A DNA stretch of 64,000 nucleotides. Origin: Ophelia neglecta. Lineage: Eukaryota. Positions 28,001-37,000 of this stretch are shown here, one piece after another. A program made the translations under genes and the position numbers. Positions within the stretch are counted from its first letter, which is position 1. Every line of letters starts with the position of its first letter. The notes under the pieces were generated by a model. The model was not told the origin of the DNA and ran no database searches. It saw nothing but the letters and a program-made list of their open reading frames with translations. The DNA is taken from positions 93,310,001 through 93,374,000 of the forward strand of contig OZ260663.1 of the NCBI GenBank assembly GCA_965285935.1. Direction: 5' to 3'.

Positions 28001-31000
28001 ACAATTCCTTATGATTTTGGACCCATTTTGCGGTTTGCTGGTATCAAATCCGTTTTTTTGTAGTTGTATAATTCAATTAAAGATAGAGTATTAATTCTAT
28101 CCTGTGTATCAAGTGCTCATTTTGTTCAATTTCACATTTGATGAAATGTTAGTTAAACCAGTGTTCTTATAGTGAGTAATATTTTACCTCAGATCCCACC
28201 AAAGGTTGGATTCCCCTGTGTGGGGCGGAGACAAGAGAGGAAGTAGTTTACCTCTCGGAGACAGAGGGCATTGAGATCAGTTTAAGTAATCCCAAGAAGA
28301 CCAATCACGGGGCGTATTTCCTACTTGGATACGAAAGTGGGTCCATTAAGTTAACTCTCTTTAATCGCAGGAACTATATAAAATGTTTTTCTGTGGGCGT
28401 AAATAGTGATTGCAAGTTGACGGCGTTATAATGACTTGCCTAGAAAAAGATCTCAAAAACGTGCACTGCGTCATGCAATAGTAGAATTTATTATCACACA
28501 ATCGTAATAATTATTGCTTTTTGTTTTTTCCATATCAGTTATAGGGTGTCCTAATTACATACCTCCTGAAGGAGGGGTCATCGAGCGCCACAATAATGAT
28601 ATAACAGTGACATGTCCCGCAACTGGAAGTGAGTGGTTCTTGTCTTGTGAAGGAACAAGTTGGAGCTCAAATGGGGCTGTTATAGAATGCGCAGAAGCAG
28701 GTTTGTGATACATGTGTTATGTCATAGTTCCGTGACAAGCAAATAAAGCTTAAGCAGAGAGATGTTGTTCTACTGCCCGATTATCTGGAATAAAGTGGAA
28801 ACATCCACACACATACAGTTCTGCTTACGACAGACCGTGATGATATCGCGACATGAGGTCGGAAAGATGCCGGTTTAAGGCCGTGATAATGTCGCAAGAT
28901 TATCGGTAACTTTGCCGGTATTACCGCGATATATTCCCGGCCTGTGTCGCAACTTTGTCGCTGGTTCGCAGTATCGCCACGACGGCCTGTGTGCCTATTT
29001 ACCGCAGCTGTGTGTAACAGAGAAACAAAAAGTAGTTCGCCTATCTGTTCTCGATCACTCGTTGAACTTCGAGCTATAATCATGGTAACTGCGAGCATAG
29101 AGTCTCATTCTTGAACTGTTATAACTATTACGGGGCTTTAGTCTCAGAATGAGTTTTTCGGTCCGTGTCAAGTTAGGATTGAGGTACCCCCCCCCCCCCC
29201 CTCCAACACAATGTCCCCGCCATATGCACGTGGCTCCCTATATACATGTATCACTTGGAGAATTTCGTATTGATAAACTAAATTGCTCCATTTATGTATA
29301 GCACCATATTATTTATCTTTCCTCCGCACACACGGGTGGTGATCGCTAGGCTTCTATGGGACATAGGCCTAATCATCATGCCAAACATTTGCCTGAAGAC
29401 GCGAGTAATCACCAGACGTCCAGTTGATTAGACAAACACATCAAAGCCACCAAAGACTACACGAGGCGACGGCTTGTGTATTTATCCAGAAACAATAGAC
29501 GCCTTCGTAATTTAATCAATTTTAGTGCAAGGGTTGAAAATCACCGTTTTAATTCTTCAGTATATGGACAGTGTCTAGAACTACAACCCAATTTAAAAAC
29601 TAAATTATGCTTACATCTTACATGACAAGTTTACAAGTAAATTCACAGAAAACGCCAGATTGCCTGATTATCAATAATATATATTGCTACTGGCCGCCTG
29701 AATGCCTCTGACAGTTAATCAACTGCGTCGGTAAAAGTATCCCCATATGCCCGCACATTGTATTGACTTCAGATGTTATTTACCCCGAAATTAATTGTTA
29801 TCATTATTATTTTCTTTGTAAAACAAGTATGTAACACATTATTTATAACTGTATTTGCACTTATCTAGCTTCAGTCTGGAGGTGATACATGTAAGTGGAT
29901 ACACCACAACCCTTGATATCTTTAAGTGCTGATCGCAATTGCTTTAGTTCGCATAAAGAAAAAGCCACATCAAACGTTCACACCTACCAACCAATGTTTC
30001 CTGCATTGCAATCATCAAAGGTGGAGAAAGTCACTAACCATTTCTCACCTATAGGATCCCTATCTCTTTGATTCAGACTAGTTTGTCACGGGGATTTTTG
30101 CAATTCGTATGCCAAAATTCAGAGTGTCTTACTTTGAGATTTATTCGATATAAGTTTCGGGGCTAGAAATTTAGAAAGATTGTATACCACAACGATGAAT
30201 GCTACCTAAGTTGGGATTTCAACTTATTCAAGATAGAATACAGATAATTTTGGAAATATGCTGACACAACACAATCTGATAATATAAGGACACTTCTTCA
30301 GTTTGTACAATTTTATTATCAACAACTGGGATAAACAATGATAACTTTAACAGAACTTGGTCTTTTATCGCATATACTATATCTGCATGTGAATCCATCA
30401 ATGCTCTGACAGGTATTAAATAGATCTACAATACAAGGAAACCTTAACTGCTTATCCCGGCTGGTTTTCGGTAAATACTATGTAATACATGTTTTCAGAA
30501 GTAGAGTAGCGGCATTTAACACCCGGTGTATCCTCCGTTAGCCTCACACACTTTAGGCAGCACCTGAAAAAGCGAAAAAATACCACATTGTAGTAATGAT
30601 ATACGGTTTTGGGCCGTGGAAGGCTTAACAGCGTTAACACCAATTAAGAGACGCTATACACACACACATCAAAGACACCGCGCCTTAGAGTAGACGACTA
30701 GCTAGAGTAGCTTGTTTACTAAACAAACGATACACAACCTAAAGACGCCGCGCCTTACAGCAGACGGCAGCTTGTTAATTAAACAAACAGAGAACAATGG
30801 CAGTACACAACTGACAACACACAGTCCAGGTAAGATTGTTGGTATGTAAATTTGGCCCTTCGCCTTTTTTATATTCAGTGACTATAGTAGATGTCAATTT
30901 GGAGTAGTGAAAGAACCTGCCACAATTACCTTTGGTATATGATCTATATATTTGTTGCATTGATCGACGGTGAGATGTTCCTCCCACGCCTTCACAATCG

Positions 31001-34000
31001 CCGCTTTTAGTTCTTCTTTGGTGTTGACTTTAGCCTTTGCCACTCGGTATTTCATAGCATGCCATACCAATTCTATAGGGTTGAGGTCTGGGGACTCTGC
31101 GGGACTGCGGAACCATGGTAGATTATGGTCCTATAGAAAACGCAAACAGGTAAGTATGTGAAATACAAGGAACGGATAAGCTGTTTTTAAATTAAGATGA
31201 TATCCAGGGTTTGATGGATACACATACAGTAGGTTTACGGCGATGAAAACAGATTTATTCATTCGCCAGAAAGCTAACAGATGTTACTGGCATAGTTTTA
31301 GATGGGCATATTAGAAAAATACTATTGTAAATATTATTTTCTGTTACCTGGAGATATCCTGATGCTAATCTGCTCGTGTGTTTGGGGTCATTATCAGCCC
31401 ACATGCGACATCCCTCTGGGTACAGGTCTCGGACTGATGGAAGATAGGCCTGGTCAAGTATCGTATTGGTGTAAAACTCTGCGTCCATGATACCTTCAAA
31501 GACAGCCAGGCATGTTGGTCCTCTGCGGCTAATTCCTCCCCACACATGCATCTTGACGCAGTTTTTGGCTTTGATACCATAGTATCGAGACTTTGAAACA
31601 TTGCCCTCTTCGTCACAGGAAACCTGAAAGAGACAAATGTGTGAGGTACATAGTTACTTTGCTGATAAAGTACTATACAATTTCATCTGTAAGTGATGTT
31701 AATCAAAGAGTGTTAATGCATGCGTATACACGTAGGCCTGCCATTACATTTAGGGCTATATTCACCACATAAATAAATAAATAAAGTACCTTCACGAGTG
31801 ATTTTCCATAATTGGCATGCGTCTGGAATGTCGATTCATCGGTGAAAACTACGTCATGAAAGGTTTCCCCCGTCCGCATCAACATCTCAGCGAATTCCAG
31901 TCTCTTTGGCTTATTGGCGTCTCGTATCATGGGCAGTACACGGATATTCTCTGCACTAAATCCCATCTTCTGTCTCATACGCCGAATACTCACTGCCGGT
32001 ATGTTAATATCGAAACGCTCGAGTATGGCATGGGACATCTCAGCTGATGTGACCTTAAATGGGGAAATAAATAGTACATCACACTAGCATGATTTTCTAC
32101 AGTGTAAAGCCCATAACTGAAAAATAAGATAGTTTTATGCCCACATGTACATGTATTGTCCATACAGGTACATGTTCGCCAGCCGATGTAAATGTACACG
32201 TATGATATGACTATAGGTGATAGTGGCTAAAAATGTATTTACCTGTCGATTTTCGAGCTTGTCGTACTCTGATTCAATGAACCTGAGAACTTCTGGTGTG
32301 GCTCTGGAGAAGTGTTTTCTGGGTGAGTCGATCAGGCTGCCGGTGTCCATGTAACGACGCACGGTGTCCGCTATAGTCTGCCGGCCGATCTTAAACCCCT
32401 CTTCCGTCATTTCTCGATAAACTTCGGAAACTGTTTTCCCATTCATGTACCGTATAACTATCTGCTGGCGTGTATGTATCGAATGGCGTGGCATTTTCTC
32501 ATCTGTTGATTGGTTCTATTGGGAGCTTGTAACTTTACAGAAATGTAGTGAATCCAAGGTTAAAGATGGGTATATTTATAAGCGTTTACACTTTCTTGGT
32601 GATCCGAGTATGCTTTCGCGGGAATTGTATCGCCGGGGTGAAATAAACAAAGTGACACGCAATGGGAGCACATCAGTGGTACCAGCATCGGGGCAATCCG
32701 GTTGTGATATCCCTGGATATCAAAGAAGTCTTAATTGGAAGTTACCCGGTCTGTAACAAACAATGCCGCGTAACCGGATTGATATGCTCCAAATAATGTT
32801 CAATATCTACTCACTTCAAAGAAACACAGGTAATTGCTTCTTTCAGATTAGCTTCACACTCTTTCCCAGGCAAGGATTTGAAAGGATTGATATGCTCTTT
32901 TTGTTTAATATTTACTCGAAACAAAGAAAGTCAGTATATACTACCTATTTGATGAGCTCCGAGCTCTCCTACAGTCAGGCATAAAACTGACACCTGCCAT
33001 CAAATTCTTCACTCTCATGAGAAACAGACAGCTCTAACACATCGACGTTTCAACATGCCACGAATAATTTTACCTAGAATGGCCCTCGTCTATTGTCCCA
33101 GTGATGAAACCACCTCTGTAGTTGACATCAAGAAAATTACTACATCTCGAGAGCTAATCAAGAAAGACGCATTGGTAGAGGTTGAGCACCAAGAAGAGAC
33201 ATTTGAAGCCCGAATATTAGCCTTGAGTGGTAAGCATAGTACCAAAATGGTTAATAAAATATTAAAAACGTTTAATGTGTATTTACTGGGAACATAAGTT
33301 ACTAAGGCATTTTATTAAATCATTCTTGTTCTCTTTTACAGATAGTCTGAAGGAATTGACGGAGTCGGAGAACGCGTTTTGGCAAGACGAGTCTGAGAAT
33401 GATGGAGGAAACTGCGACCCACCGTCACTTGAGTCCACGCCCAGATGTCCGACCCCGCCGCCGAGAAGCCCGACACCACCACCTACTAGACTACCCAGGC
33501 GAAAGTACGAGCAGAGCAAGCCTCTTAAGTCTGGCAAGCCACCAGTACGTACTAGCGTAATATTTATTTAAATACACGTCTATGTATAAAATAACTTAAT
33601 AATGGCATTCATTTTCCCATAAACGAAATATTAATAACGATTTCTTGGTGGTTGTTTAAGAAGTAAAGGCTTACATGTGTATATGCCTTTAAGACATTGT
33701 GAATATTATCGACAATATTGTATCAGTGTTTTTTTTCTATAGGCGAAATGTTTGACAATATATCGGCCTACTCTGCTGAGGACTACGGAGGACACGCCCT
33801 CCATTATAGGAGAGGCTATGAGAGCCCTCACAGAGCCTGTGATCGTGCAGGAGGAGGACCATCACGCACCCGGGGCGAGCGCTTTTCCGGCCCCGGGAGT
33901 ATCCACCTCGGGATCCACCTCCACCGAGACCAGGCCATCCTCGGGGTCCACCTCCTTCTCTAATTTAGTGAAATCCAAGGTAAATAAAAGAATGTATAGC

Positions 34001-37000
34001 ATTGGACATGATAGTAATATTTAGGATTTATCCATACGCTCGTAAAAACAATTCTTAAAACGTGATCAGAACCTATAAGTTTAACAGTAGGCCTACATTA
34101 AAAAATTATATTGTTCACCATTGAAGTACAGAAAATAAATCAAGGGTGTATTTAGTTCATTTCTCTTTCTTCTTTTGTAGGAGCCGCATGTACAGGCCGA
34201 TGGTAACATCCTCCCTGACCGCACTGTCCCAATCAGGAGGGAGGAAACATCACTTGCGGACCGATTAGGCATTCTGGAGAAGAAGATGGCCCGACTGGAG
34301 ATCCTGGAGCGGACTGTAGCGGAGCAACAGGCGGAAATCGAACGCCTTCGGTTGGCACTCAGTACACGGGGTGACCAGGCTCCCCTACAGCCACCAACCG
34401 TGCCTGAGGAAGGTCAGGCAGAGGAAGCTGTTCCGGTCCAGCCACCCTTTCGGGGCCATGCCGCTCCCCAGGCCGCTGCACCAGAGACAGACGCTCCCCA
34501 GGCCGCCCCTCTCGAGGCGGTTCCCCAAGCAGCCGCACCCCAACCCGCAGGTGCTCCCCGGGCCGCAGCTCGCCAGGCAGCCCAGCCCCAGCCCACGAGA
34601 CACCTCAGGCCTGAAGACGCGCGGTGCCTGAATGAGCTCGACGTCATTCAGCCAAACTATGAAGCGGACCCTGAGCTTGTCAGGCAACTCATTACGGACA
34701 GGTGTACGGCCCGTGTATTCATATCGCAACTAGCCAGGTCCATGTATTCGGTGCATGAACGGGCAGCCGACTGCAATGTCATGGGCCGAGGCCGGCCTTC
34801 CATTTCACCTCAGAAGCGTAGACTTCAGACCATCACTGAAGTGTACCGGCGAACATTCGGCATTACTTCAATCAAGGACTCCCGGAACCTTGTAAGAACC
34901 ACGATCGATGACATAAACCGACATTACAGGATTCTGCTGCGCAAGGCACTGGACAGGGACTAATTGTGGCTTCGTGTGATTATGATTGTAAACAGAACTG
35001 ATTTAGACGTTTCATTGCAGAAACATAGCCTATATATATTGTTCGTGTTTATTGGTGGGGGTCTGTGAATGTACTGTACATATACTGTCGCACTTTAAAT
35101 TTGTCGCAGTTTTCTATATTATGTTTTTATTATCCATATATTTATGTTCATTAAAAAAAATTATCTAATATTTCAGTATGCAATAAAGTGTAACACATTT
35201 AGAGCAAGTTTACTGTTTTATATTACAATACACATAAATGATGTTTCTTCATCTTTATATAAAGACTTGAATATTATTAGGGCGAACACTAGAATAGCTT
35301 AACATCCATATATGGCCAGTGTACAAGGGCATGCCAGGCTACAATTGGCTTTCGACTATCTGAAATTACATTCAGACTAAACTTTATTGCTGACAGCATA
35401 CACTAACGTTAGGCCTACGCTAGACCATCGACTGCCGCGTAGTAATTTTGGCATGGTATACCGCAGTCCGGCTATCGCCCACAGCCAGACTGGTCAGTGC
35501 CGGCACATATCGCGGCCGCAACTCCGACAATATTGCGATACGGACCGCGGTTCTGCCGGCAAAAGTTGTAAAATTGTCGGGCTCCTATCGCGATATTATG
35601 GCCGATGTTCCGTGATATTATCCCGATAATACAGCGATATCATCACGGTCTGTCGTAAGCAGAACTGTATCTAGATTATAAGGCTCATACCTTCATGCTC
35701 AGAAGGATGTTCAATGCCTGTAATAGTTGAGAAGCATATGGTCCAATAAACTAATCGAATATGTAATTATAAAAGATCAGATGCTGCTAGAATGATAGTT
35801 TAAATTTAGCTGCATGATCGCTTTTTTTTCAAACGCATAGCCTACCTTTTCTAATCACGTGTAATTTTTCATTGGGAAAAAAATTATATTTGTATTTGAT
35901 AGACTTTACGTTGGTAATGCGGCATTTCCAAATCAAGATATTGCGACTGCACAAATGACAAACACATTTAGACCAACGAAAACAAACCATTGTAAGGTAG
36001 AAAATATAACAGACCGTAGTGCGTGGCCTCCCTTCATTCTTATTTGCAGACGACATGAAACGAAATGTTTATGTATAGGTTCATACGTACGGATTTCATC
36101 ATCAAGGTAAATTTTTTTTTTTACAGATGGTCCGTCTATGTCTATTGGTGCTCTGTTTAAGAGTGCTCTAACCTTACCACAATGTGAGTAAACAAACTTT
36201 AGTTAATTGATATCAAATTAATAATAAACTAAGCCATCAACATCCTCCCTTCGTATGTATCAGAAAGAAAAAAAAATTTAAACTAGCTTCAAACATTCTT
36301 ACCATTTCTCACTCATAATACTTTTCAGGGTTACTCATTGTAATAATCATAGCTGCTGCAGTTATCATAGCATTGCCTATAACTGTGATCGGCATTTTAA
36401 GTTTTCGAAGGTCAGTGCCACATGTTTTTTATTACATTTTTCAAAAGATGCAAGACCCAGTTAACTTTGTAAGCTTCCATTTAGTATTGAAATAGACAAC
36501 GCTATTCATCGCCGTCGAATGATCCTCGAATACCTACCTTTTTTAATATAGTACCGCTCATCAATGAACATTTTATGTAGGTTCCTGTCTGGTTTTCTAA
36601 GGCTGGAAATTAAAACGACAACAAAATCAATAACCATTGATCTTACGTTATTCCATATTTCTTTCTGAACAGAAAACATGACCAGATATCAACGTATGGC
36701 CCAAACCAGCAGTTGGACGCTGATGAGTGCTTGTCACATCCGGGGTATTGTGCAAAAGAATATGATCCAATGCTGAATAGAAACGATTTAACGGGAAACT
36801 CCTTTCGAGGCAGGGAGTATATTACTACCGCGCAAAGACATAAGGCTGCACGTCCGGGCGCTGTGACACCTGGTGGTGATTTTTCCCATCTGCCTTTACC
36901 ACCGTCCGCATTTTCCGCAGAAACCGGGAACAACACCATGAGCGCAAAACCAGGTGGAGAACGGTCTCCACGGGATAGTACGAATACTTCATACAAAGTA

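What the first reader, a model, noticed from the sequence alone, without database searches (positions are those of the whole stretch)
28836..35654. Helically phased (~11 bp) CpG arrays with CGCG palindromes at both transposon ends: candidate binding platform for the element's own BEN protein
Seen: left-end CpGs fall at 28849/60/71/82/93/904/916/927/938/948/959, in degenerate T[A/G][T/C]CG[C/G]-like units. The right end shows similar spacing (35501-35646) without being a simple inverted copy beyond 34 bp. TATCGCGATA lies at 35586-35595, TATCGCGACA at 28844-28853 and TACCGCGATA at 28922-28931. Known: the BEN protein BANP binds TCTCGCGAGA-type elements in a CpG-methylation-sensitive way, and the Harbinger Myb protein binds subterminal repeats. 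Inference: spacing of one helical turn is conserved while sequence drifts, as expected if an oligomeric protein coats one face of the DNA. This could make the ends a methylation-sensitive switch for transposition.
Basis: partly seen in the sequence, partly recalled or inferred. Interest (0 to 1): 0.78.

Follow-up and report, generated by a model that had tools for sequence, protein, structure and literature searches.

The report
Phased CpG arrays at transposon ends
Both ends of a two-gene Tc1-type jumping gene carry a conserved row of about a dozen CpG-centred 11-base units locked in register with the element's tips, most likely a docking platform for the element's own DNA-binding protein(s), though which protein binds is unproven and the proposed methylation switch has no support.

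Summary
Window 28816-35667 is a 6,852-bp Tc1-type transposon, not a Harbinger: TA duplication, 34-bp terminal inverted repeats (TIRs), and an intact four-exon DD34E transposase on the minus strand. It also has a divergently transcribed four-exon gene whose C-terminus has a BEN fold.

From about base 21 to 165 inside each tip, CpGs sit on an 11.1-bp lattice. None of 5000 shuffles reached the left-end signal; the right end gave p=0.003. The units are degenerate 11-mers (wATrYCGsnAT): a CG core with an AT-rich patch half a turn away.

Left and right ends share the same phase relative to the tip, although they do not align beyond the TIR. Three subfamilies at 69-76% end identity keep the lattice without indels. 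This argues for a selected cis-acting platform.

- The binder is unknown; both the BEN partner and the transposase's two-part HTH are plausible.
- Two other BEN-plus-Tc1 lineages from metagenomes lack the lattice.
- CGCG is not enriched beyond CpG density.
- 11.1 bp is not the 10.5-bp B-DNA repeat.
- CpG decay in dead copies is only 1.5-fold.

I rate it a new variant of a known kind, of moderate interest.

The parts
28814..28815 (.). TA target-site duplication, left
   Evidence: TA immediately flanks the terminus in nearly all of the 22 ends examined. The sequence was read.
28816..28849 (+). Left 34-bp terminal inverted repeat (CAGTTCTGC...GATATCGC). Its inner half already holds lattice CpGs at positions 21 and 32.
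   Evidence: Perfect inverted repeat I1. It is 100% conserved in many copies.
28835..28849 (+). TIR-inner 15-mer CCGTGATGATATCGC. It spans two lattice units and is a candidate outer transposase site.
   Evidence: It is repeated directly at 28881-28895 with 13 of 15 bases identical (read). A comparable inner repeat occurs about 46 bp further in, in the subfamily B and C left ends.
28881..28895 (+). Inner direct repeat CCGTGATAATGTCGC of the TIR-inner motif (IR-DR-like)
   Evidence: Read.
28836..28985 (.). Left lattice: about 14 degenerate 11-bp units. Lattice CpGs lie at positions 21, 32, 45, 56, 67, 78, 89, 101, 110, 123, 133, 144, 152 and 165 from the tip.
30894..32494 (-). Tc1-like DD34E transposase gene of 342 codons plus stop. 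Four exons: 32494-32243, 32053-31790, 31623-31348, 31130-30894. All introns are GT-AG.
   Evidence: DDE_3 hit at E 2.5e-8, above the Pfam cut-off; HTH_Tnp_Tc3_2 hit at E 7e-4, below it. Exons are 76-85% conserved at protein level between subfamilies A and B. Frames are open and splice signals canonical.
32495..33054 (.). Region between the two divergent start codons; presumed bidirectional promoter
   Evidence: Inferred from gene orientation only. No RNA run was available.
33055..34963 (+). Accessory gene of 465 codons plus stop. Four exons: 33055-33229, 33342-33544, 33743-33979, 34181-34963.
   Evidence: Frames are open and introns GT-AG. Exon 1 is conserved between subfamilies A and B at 70% and the BEN exon at 68.5%.
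34286..34360 (+). Predicted coiled-coil segment (MARLEILERTVAEQQAEIERLRLAL) upstream of the BEN-fold domain
   Evidence: A heptad-like sequence, conserved in paralogues. Relatives give weak coiled-coil family hits. Its role in dimerisation is inferred.
34622..34945 (+). BEN-fold DNA-binding domain (divergent; not hit by Pfam PF10523)
   Evidence: AlphaFold2 model with pLDDT 85. VIA-align places nine BEN structures on top at Z 7.0-8.0, the next unrelated chain at 5.6. ESM Atlas feature hits are BEN clusters at 0.92. hhalign to a Pfam-BEN protein gives E 5e-9.
35497..35647 (.). Right lattice. Lattice CpGs lie at positions 21, 32, 43, 56, 64, 76, 89, 110, 121, 131, 142, 154 and 166 from the right tip, in the same phase as the left end.
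35634..35667 (-). Right 34-bp terminal inverted repeat
35668..35669 (.). TA target-site duplication, right

Best explanation
The arrays are a selected, cis-acting protein-docking platform at each end of a two-gene Tc1-type (DD34E, TA-inserting) transposon. Each platform has about 12-14 degenerate 11.1-bp units: a YCGS core, with an ATwAT patch half a period away. It starts inside the 34-bp TIR and runs to about 165 bp from the tip, in fixed register with the cleavage site.

I propose that element-encoded protein binds these units cooperatively. The favoured candidate is the accessory protein, which has a coiled coil followed by a BEN fold. It would act as a dimer or higher oligomer, possibly alongside transposase bound at the TIR and at the inner direct repeat. 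Because 11.1 bp exceeds the 10.5-bp helical repeat, such an array would underwind or wrap the DNA into a filament-like end complex. That complex would mark true ends and help pair them for excision.

Shown: the lattice, its phase lock to both tips, its conservation, both gene models, the BEN fold, and the long-term linkage of the BEN gene with the transposase.

Inferred: that any protein binds the lattice, which protein it is, cooperativity, wrapping, and a role in synapsis.
For: Periodicity:
- It exceeds every one of 5000 shuffles at the left end; p=0.003 at the right.
- Whole-sequence 11/22/33/44 autocorrelation is seen in six ends.
- The unit logo shows information at CG and at A(-4), T(-3), A(+4), T(+5).

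Phase and conservation:
- Left and right ends, unalignable beyond 34 bp, share the lattice phase relative to their own tips. So do subfamilies B and C (mean phases within about 1.4 bp of each other; pooled power 24.6 at 11.1 bp).
- Subfamily B (about 75% identity at the ends) scores 11.4 at 11.3 bp. The subfamily C right end scores 9.9 at 11.0 bp.
- The ends align without indels over the first 90 nt (left) and about 127 nt (right), at 25-30% divergence.

The accessory protein:
- It has a BEN fold and a homology link to Pfam BEN.
- A basic loop (NVxGxxxRPxLSPxKxR) and helix residues (D..NR) are invariant across all lineages.
- The BEN-like gene and the Tc1 transposase lie divergently about 3 kb apart in lineages down to 33% BEN identity in this genome. 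The same pairing occurs in metagenome contigs of other organisms.
- BEN domains are sequence-specific binders. BANP prefers AAATCTCG or TCGCG next to an A-tract (PMC10206803), which loosely resembles the unit AATATCGC.

Precedent: helically phased subterminal repeats nucleate a transposase filament that captures the other end in IS1535 (PMC6188088).
Against: - There are no binding, expression or transposition data. No RNA runs were available.
- Two other BEN-plus-Tc1 lineages keep the same invariant putative DNA-reading residues, yet their right ends lack any 11-bp CpG lattice. L076 has power 1.7 and two 16-bp direct repeats instead. L082 has 6 CpGs in 200 nt.
- The TIR-inner 15-mer recurs about 46 bp further in, like a Tc1 IR-DR transposase site. 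The two HTH subdomains of Tc1 transposases naturally read grooves about 11 bp apart.
- Pfam BEN does not hit the protein directly.
- Exact 10- and 11-bp CpG arrays are common in this genome: 1033 and 1339 places, mostly tandem repeats and other repeat families. The architecture is not unique to this element.
Confidence: 0.45

Rival explanations
1. A transposase-only platform. The lattice is a run of overlapping or iterated binding sites for the transposase's bipartite (PAI+RED-like) helix-turn-helix domain, an extended version of the IR-DR ends of Sleeping Beauty-type Tc1 elements. The BEN-fold protein would do something else, such as regulating transcription or acting on host chromatin.
For: - The lattice begins inside the TIR, with units at positions 21 and 32.
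- The 15-mer CCGTGATRATRTCGC of the TIR recurs about 46 bp further in, in the left ends of subfamilies A, B and C, and in inverted form at the right end of A.
- BEN-plus-Tc1 lineages elsewhere lack the lattice although the BEN reading residues are unchanged.
- From general knowledge: the two HTH subdomains of Tc1/mariner transposases contact successive major grooves about one turn apart.
Against: - From general knowledge: known Tc1 elements use one or two sites per end, not 12-14 units over 145 bp.
- Most units share only CG plus AT with the TIR-inner motif.
- The partly symmetric outer AT..CG..AT pattern suits a symmetric binder better than an asymmetric bipartite HTH.
Confidence: 0.3
2. Structural DNA without a dedicated binder. 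The alternation of CG and AT-rich patches at 11.1 bp gives the ends a curved or superhelical shape, or disfavours nucleosomes, and so keeps the ends accessible.
For: - CG cores and ATwAT patches alternate half a period apart.
- The period of 11.1 bp is clearly off the roughly 10.2-bp nucleosomal repeat (general knowledge). Pooled power falls to 2.6 at 10.5 bp.
Against: - Conservation of specific bases (Y before CG; A, T at fixed offsets) goes beyond what composition alone would need.
- The strict phase lock to the cleavage site points the same way.
- No curvature or nucleosome data were obtained.
Confidence: 0.1
3. A methylation-gated switch. CpG methylation of the lattice would block binding by the BEN protein and so turn transposition off.
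For: - Every unit centres on a CpG.
- All four subfamily D copies have TG in place of CG at the first five lattice sites of the right end, as deamination would give.
- The genome has at least one C5-cytosine methyltransferase exon.
- In vivo, BANP binding is reported to be methylation-sensitive, as cited in PMC10206803.
Against: - CpG transitions in 17 family-A end copies are only 1.5 times non-CpG transitions.
- CpG observed/expected is about 0.9 in the element and the window, and about 1.5 in the ends.
- Isolated BANP and BEND6 BEN domains bind methylated and unmethylated DNA about equally.
- No methylation data exist for this locus.
Confidence: 0.1
4. A neutral relic. An ancestral 11-bp minisatellite at the ends has simply decayed, and its register persists only because the subfamilies are homologous.
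For: - 10- and 11-bp tandem repeats with CpG are abundant in this genome.
- The A, B, C and D ends are positionally homologous, so shared CpG positions are partly inheritance.
Against: - Left and right arrays are not alignable, yet they share period and phase relative to the tip.
- About 85% of lattice slots (71 of 84) hold a CpG, against about 44% expected at that CpG density (and arithmetic).
- There are no indels over the first 90 nt (left) and about 127 nt (right), at 25-30% divergence.
- Hypermutable CpGs are retained in the active-looking lineages.
Confidence: 0.05

Closest known systems
IS607-family IS1535 ends (bacterial serine transposase)
   Same: Short direct repeats lie in helical phase, starting about 20 bp from the tip. 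They nucleate a cooperative nucleoprotein filament that captures the second end (PMC6188088).
   Different: - IS1535 has four 9-bp motifs over about 40 bp, bound by the transposase itself. Here there are 12-14 units over about 145 bp.
- It uses a prokaryotic serine recombinase and has no TIR or target-site duplication.
- Here the transposase is a eukaryotic DDE enzyme, with a separate candidate binder.
En/Spm (CACTA) TnpA and PIF/Harbinger Myb-like proteins (own knowledge, not tested here)
   Same: The transposon encodes a second, non-catalytic DNA-binding protein. That protein binds multiple subterminal repeats and helps bring the ends and the transposase together.
   Different: - These belong to different superfamilies: 3-bp target-site duplications and other transposases.
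- Their repeats are not arranged as a regular one-turn lattice.
- Their partner proteins are TnpA or Myb/SANT, not BEN.
- A Harbinger membership test fails here (TA duplication, DDE_3).
IR-DR Tc1 elements such as Sleeping Beauty (own knowledge)
   Same: Same superfamily features: TA duplication, CAGT... tips and a DD34E transposase with a bipartite HTH. There is an inner direct repeat of the TIR-inner motif.
   Different: - IR-DR elements have two transposase sites per end, roughly 160-200 bp apart, and a single intronless gene.
- Here there is a continuous 11.1-bp lattice, a 6.85-kb element, a four-exon transposase and a second gene.
BANP / BEND3-type BEN domains reading CG-containing motifs
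   Same: A BEN fold, with Z 7.3-7.5 to BANP structures. The candidate sites are CG-centred with an adjacent A/T-rich stretch; BANP's optimum is AAATCTCG or TCGCG.
   Different: - No TCTCGCGAGA was seen in either end, and CGCG is not enriched.
- Identity to BANP is only 18-20%.
- The protein is transposon-encoded and preceded by a coiled coil.
- Methylation sensitivity of the isolated BEN domain is disputed.
Ac/Ds subterminal AAACGG hexamers (own knowledge)
   Same: Many short CpG-containing subterminal motifs, whose occupancy by transposase is affected by cytosine methylation.
   Different: Ac/Ds is a hAT element. Its motifs have irregular spacing and orientation and are bound by the transposase itself.

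Membership tests
Tc1/mariner superfamily (Tc1-like, DD34E) | TA target-site duplication and TIRs beginning CAGT | tested here: met
   TA directly flanks the tip in nearly all of 22 ends. The TIR is a perfect 34 bp.
Tc1/mariner superfamily (Tc1-like, DD34E) | DDE_3-type catalytic core with 34 residues between the second D and the E | tested here: met
   PF13358 scores 34.3 bits against a cut-off of 28.6, E 2.5e-8, on exon 4. DNDPKH at the end of exon 3 and SPDLNPIE in exon 4 give 35 positions from D to E across a GT-AG intron.
Tc1/mariner superfamily (Tc1-like, DD34E) | N-terminal paired-like bipartite HTH | tested here: inconclusive
   HTH_Tnp_Tc3_2 scores E 7e-4 at 20.3 bits, below the 31.5-bit cut-off. 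HTH_23 and HTH_28 are weak.
PIF/Harbinger with Myb-like partner | 3-bp TWA target-site duplication, DDE_Tnp_4 transposase and a Myb/SANT partner protein | tested here: not met
   The duplication is TA. The transposase hits DDE_3. The partner protein has a BEN fold, not Myb.
BEN domain (PF10523) | Match to the Pfam model at its gathering score | tested here: not met
   No BEN hit even at E up to 10, for the protein or for 9 paralogues. PDB sequence searches were also blank.
BEN domain (PF10523) | Demonstrable homology to proteins that do match the model | tested here: met
   The profile search reaches Limulus LOC106472319 (E 4.3e-4). Residues 550-618 of that protein hit PF10523 at E 9.6e-9. hhalign of the profile against it gives probability 95.9%, E 5.2e-9, over residues 517-621.
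BEN domain (PF10523) | All-alpha BEN fold | tested here: met
   The model has pLDDT 85.2. Nine BEN entries rank 1-9 at Z 7.0-8.0, rmsd 2.7-3.8 Å over 82-92 residues; the next chain scores 5.6. Foldseek E-values alone are not significant. Z below 8 is middling for helical folds.
BEN domain (PF10523) | Sequence-specific DNA binding | not testable with these tools
   Needs EMSA, DAP-seq or SELEX.
BANP-type CGCG element | TCTCGCGAGA-like palindrome, enriched at the sites | tested here: not met
   No TCTCGCGAGA was seen in either end as read. The TCGCGA core occurs once per end. CGCG occurs 2 and 3 times against 2.2 and 2.5 expected from the ends' own dinucleotide content.
Helically phased subterminal binding platform (IS1535-like logic) | Repeated motif at one-turn spacing, in fixed register near the tip, at both ends | tested here: met
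   The period is 11.1 bp.
Helically phased subterminal binding platform (IS1535-like logic) | Cooperative occupancy by an element-encoded protein and a requirement for transposition | not testable with these tools
   Needs footprinting and transposition assays.

The most novel reading that the evidence does not exclude
A eukaryotic cut-and-paste Tc1 transposon has recruited a coiled-coil BEN-fold protein. This protein polymerises on a 145-bp lattice of CpG/AT units phased at 11.1 bp at each end, wrapping or underwinding the DNA. The result is a filament-type end complex that licenses synapsis. It would be a two-protein transpososome architecture not described for Tc1/mariner, with CpG status of the lattice as a possible gate.
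Probability: 0.2. Interest if true: 0.8.

Novelty: new variant of a known kind. Interest (0 to 1): 0.55.

Why it matters
Tc1/mariner elements are the textbook minimal transposons: one gene and short ends. They are also the basis of tools such as Sleeping Beauty.

A lineage that keeps a second DNA-binding protein over long evolutionary distances would suggest that this superfamily can also use accessory-protein end complexes. In one branch that lineage has built a long lattice phase-locked to the tip at both ends. Such complexes are otherwise known from CACTA, Harbinger, Mu and IS607 elements.

The lattice gives a clean experimental handle. Phase shifts, CG-to-TG changes and presence or absence of the accessory gene can each be tested. 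These tests could show how BEN domains read DNA in arrays and how transposon ends are told apart from stray sites. Without experiments it remains a well-documented sequence architecture with an inferred function.

Tried and rejected
- Harbinger identity was rejected: the duplication is TA and the transposase is DDE_3.
- Direct BEN assignment by Pfam, PDB sequence search and the word-indexed protein search all came back blank. It was settled by fold search and a transitive profile link instead.
- CGCG or BANP-motif enrichment is not above local CpG density.
- There is no strong germline methylation signal. The CpG transition excess is only 1.5-fold.
The F-lineage loci already held do not reach the terminus.
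- A scan of JGI metagenome contigs with a degenerate TIR pattern, and another with the BEN profile, found nothing.
- Four further contig look-ups gave gene context, but DNA for only one. That one, L089, shows 10-bp CGTGCGAGC repeats, but its terminus could not be defined.
- Sequencing runs comprised three DNA runs of one sample and no RNA. Laying contigs on the left junction showed no empty-site allele, only flank heterozygosity.
- Exact-spacing pattern counts across the genome showed that 10- and 11-bp CpG arrays are common. They come mostly from tandem repeats and other repeat families. Genome-wide rarity therefore cannot be claimed.

Full report
**What is there**

Window 28816-35667 is one 6,852-bp DNA transposon.
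- It has perfect 34-bp terminal inverted repeats (TIRs) starting CAGTTCTGC. These are 28816-28849 and 35634-35667.
- It is flanked by a TA duplication. The same TA is seen at nearly all of 22 ends from other copies.
- That feature and the protein evidence make it a Tc1-like member of Tc1/mariner, not a Harbinger.

The transposase lies on the minus strand in four exons with GT-AG introns and open frames: 32494-32243, 32053-31790, 31623-31348 and 31130-30894 (342 codons).
- Exon 4 hits DDE_3 above Pfam's cut-off (E 2.5e-8).
- Exon 2 weakly hits the Tc3-type HTH.
- Counting from DNDPKH to SPDLNPIE across the inferred splice gives the DD34E spacing.

A second gene is transcribed divergently. Its exons are 33055-33229, 33342-33544, 33743-33979 and 34181-34963 (465 codons).

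**The second protein**

Pfam's BEN model does not hit it, even at E up to 10. PDB sequence searches and the word-indexed search were also blank. Three other lines converge on a divergent BEN domain at 34622-34945:
1. ESM Atlas feature hits are BEN clusters, best score 0.92.
2. An AlphaFold2 model built on nine paralogues from this genome has pLDDT 85. By VIA-align its nine best matches are all BEN-domain structures: Insv, Bsg25A, BEND3, BANP, BEND6 and NACC1. They score Z 7.0-8.0 at rmsd 2.7-3.8 Å over 82-92 residues; the next chain scores 5.6. Foldseek E-values alone were not significant.
3. The profile search over 1.84 billion representatives found 53 relatives. One is a Limulus protein whose matching region is a Pfam BEN domain (E 9.6e-9). 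hhalign of my profile against it gives probability 95.9% and E 5e-9.

A basic loop (NVxGxxxRPxLSPxKxR) and helix residues (D..NR) are invariant in all lineages. A heptad-like coiled-coil segment precedes the domain.

**The observation**

- CpG positions give spectral power 9.3-11.5 at 11.1 bp in the left end; 0 of 5000 dinucleotide-preserving shuffles reach it.
- The right end gives 7.0 at 11.0 bp (p=0.003).
- These are the strongest such windows in the 64 kb.

The periodicity is not confined to CpG. Base-identity autocorrelation in six ends peaks at 11, 22, 33 and 44 (0.42, 0.375, 0.354, 0.335) with troughs near 0.18. So these are degenerate 11-bp tandem units.

Aligning 71 units on their CpG gives wATrYCGsnAT. 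Between successive CGs the spacer reads S-N-A-T-A-A-T-R-Y. That is, a CG core alternates with an AT-rich patch half a period away.

**Conservation**

About ten left ends and seven right ends of the same family exist in the genome. The younger ones keep the lattice; the older ones have lost CpGs.

Three diverged subfamilies keep it:
- B is a 6,190-bp two-gene element on another chromosome, about 75% identical at the ends. It scores 11.4 at 11.3 bp.
- C is about 69% identical. It scores 9.9 at 11.0 bp at its right end.

In all six ends, lattice CpGs fall at about 21, 32, 43-45, 54-56, 64-67, 76-78, 89, 100, 110, 121-123, 131-133, 142-144, 154 and 165 from the tip.
- 71 of 84 slots are filled.
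- Pooled power is 24.6 at 11.1 bp and 2.6 at 10.5 bp.
- Left and right ends do not align beyond the TIR, yet they share period and phase relative to their own tips.
- Between subfamilies the ends align without indels over the first 90 nt (left) and about 127 nt (right).

I read this as selection on spacing and on the CG/AT pattern. Part of the shared register between subfamilies is simple homology.

All four copies of a fourth subfamily, D, have TG instead of CG at the first five lattice sites of the right end.

**Linkage of the two genes**

BEN-like exons and Tc1 transposase exons lie divergently about 3 kb apart at many places in this genome. This includes lineages with only 33-42% BEN identity and 62-68% transposase-exon identity.

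Relatives on metagenome contigs from other, unnamed organisms show the same pair of genes. So the partnership is old.

I found no paper on a BEN partner in Tc1/mariner elements in the searchable library. Other first-stage notes of this scan flag BEN-carrying transposons in this genome.

1. For two of the foreign lineages I could place the right terminus, by finding where copies diverge.
   - One has the TIR CAGGTAAGAC and two 16-bp direct repeats, with no lattice (power 1.7).
   - The other has only 6 CpGs in 200 nt.
   - Their BEN domains keep the same invariant residues. So the lattice is specific to the lineage in this genome and is not a general requirement of this BEN protein.
2. The TIR-inner 15-mer CCGTGATGATATCGC recurs at 28881-28895, and comparably in B and C. 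This looks like an IR-DR transposase site. A bipartite HTH reads grooves about one turn apart, so the transposase is a credible binder.
3. CGCG is not enriched beyond CpG density.
4. The 11.1-bp period means about 20 degrees of drift per unit on relaxed B-DNA. 'One face' therefore requires underwinding or wrapping.
5. Evidence for methylation is thin.
   - The CpG transition excess in dead copies is only 1.5-fold.
   - CpG observed/expected is about 0.9 in the window.
   - One C5-methyltransferase exon is present in the genome.
   - Isolated BANP and BEND6 BEN domains are about methylation-insensitive in vitro (PMC10206803).
6. Exact arrays of six CpGs at 11-bp spacing occur 1,339 times in the genome, and at 10-bp spacing 1,033 times. 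Most are in tandem repeats and other repeat families. One-turn repeats are a common motif of repeats in this genome.

**Most likely mechanism**

I favour (0.45) a cis-acting docking platform that is occupied cooperatively by element-encoded protein. The coiled-coil BEN-fold partner is the leading candidate. Transposase would sit at the TIR and at the inner repeat. Together they would form a filament-like or wrapped end complex that marks true ends and aids pairing.

IS1535 is a precedent: helically phased subterminal repeats nucleate a filament that captures the other end (PMC6188088). From general knowledge, En/Spm TnpA and the Harbinger Myb-like protein are analogous accessory binders.

Rivals are a transposase-only platform (0.3), structural DNA (0.1), a methylation gate as an added layer (0.1) and a neutral relic (0.05). 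Only the sequence architecture, the gene models, the fold and the linkage are shown. Binding and function are inferred.

**Limits**

I therefore could not read the ends of lineages E and F or of BEN-less Tc1 relatives, which would be the decisive in-silico comparison.
- No RNA or methylation data were available.

**Verdict**

This is a new variant of a known kind: a Tc1-like element with an accessory BEN-fold gene and long ends carrying a lattice phase-locked to the tip. Interest is moderate (0.55).

Noticed in passing
G000 places listed, e.g. C1:27939724, C1:28036140, C1:44916842 (CGTATGGCTAG-type units); C1:14466/14596 and C1:35998396/526; C1:36280746 (CCCGTGATT...TCTCGGTCATAG 22-bp units): Several other multi-copy repeat families of this genome carry degenerate CpG arrays at exact 11-bp spacing. 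One resembles the CCGTGAT TIR-inner motif of this element. One-turn subterminal repeats may be a general design among this genome's transposons.
   Followed up: partly
L039 (G000:C7:107332548-107338458) versus window 33376-34296: The only other near-full-length copy is 97-98% identical. It lacks 921 bp running from exon 2 to the start of exon 4 of the accessory gene. The window copy is therefore the only family-A copy seen with both genes intact.
   Followed up: partly
window 33055-33229 (exon 1 of the accessory gene) and P0051 residues about 17-80: The N-terminal segment (ALVYCPSDETTSVVDIKKI...FEARILALS) resembles the N-terminus of the Limulus BEN protein and of several metagenome relatives. 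It may be a small beta-rich (Tudor- or chromo-like?) module. Pfam gave no hit.
   Followed up: no
window 28514-28708 (+): An open frame just left of the insertion (…GCPNYIPPEGGVIERHNNDITVTCPATGSEWFLSCEGTSWSS…) looks like a sushi/CCP-type exon. The transposon may sit in an intron of a host gene.
   Followed up: no
window 28470-28768: Contigs of the three DNA runs show two haplotypes of the left flank at similar depth, differing at 9-11 sites. No empty-site allele was seen at the junction.
   Followed up: partly
window 29188-29200: There is a run of about 13 C inside the element's non-coding left arm. Contigs disagree on its length by 2-3 bases.
   Followed up: no
L089:2090-2140: Another BEN-like gene from a metagenome contig is followed by three to four CGTGCGAGC units at 10-bp spacing. 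This may be a different subterminal repeat in a related element. The terminus was not defined.
   Followed up: partly
L050, L053, L054, L056 (subfamily D right ends): All four copies share TG for CG at the first five lattice sites, and L053, L054 and L056 carry an in-frame TAG in the BEN exon. They may descend from one already mutated source copy.
   Followed up: partly
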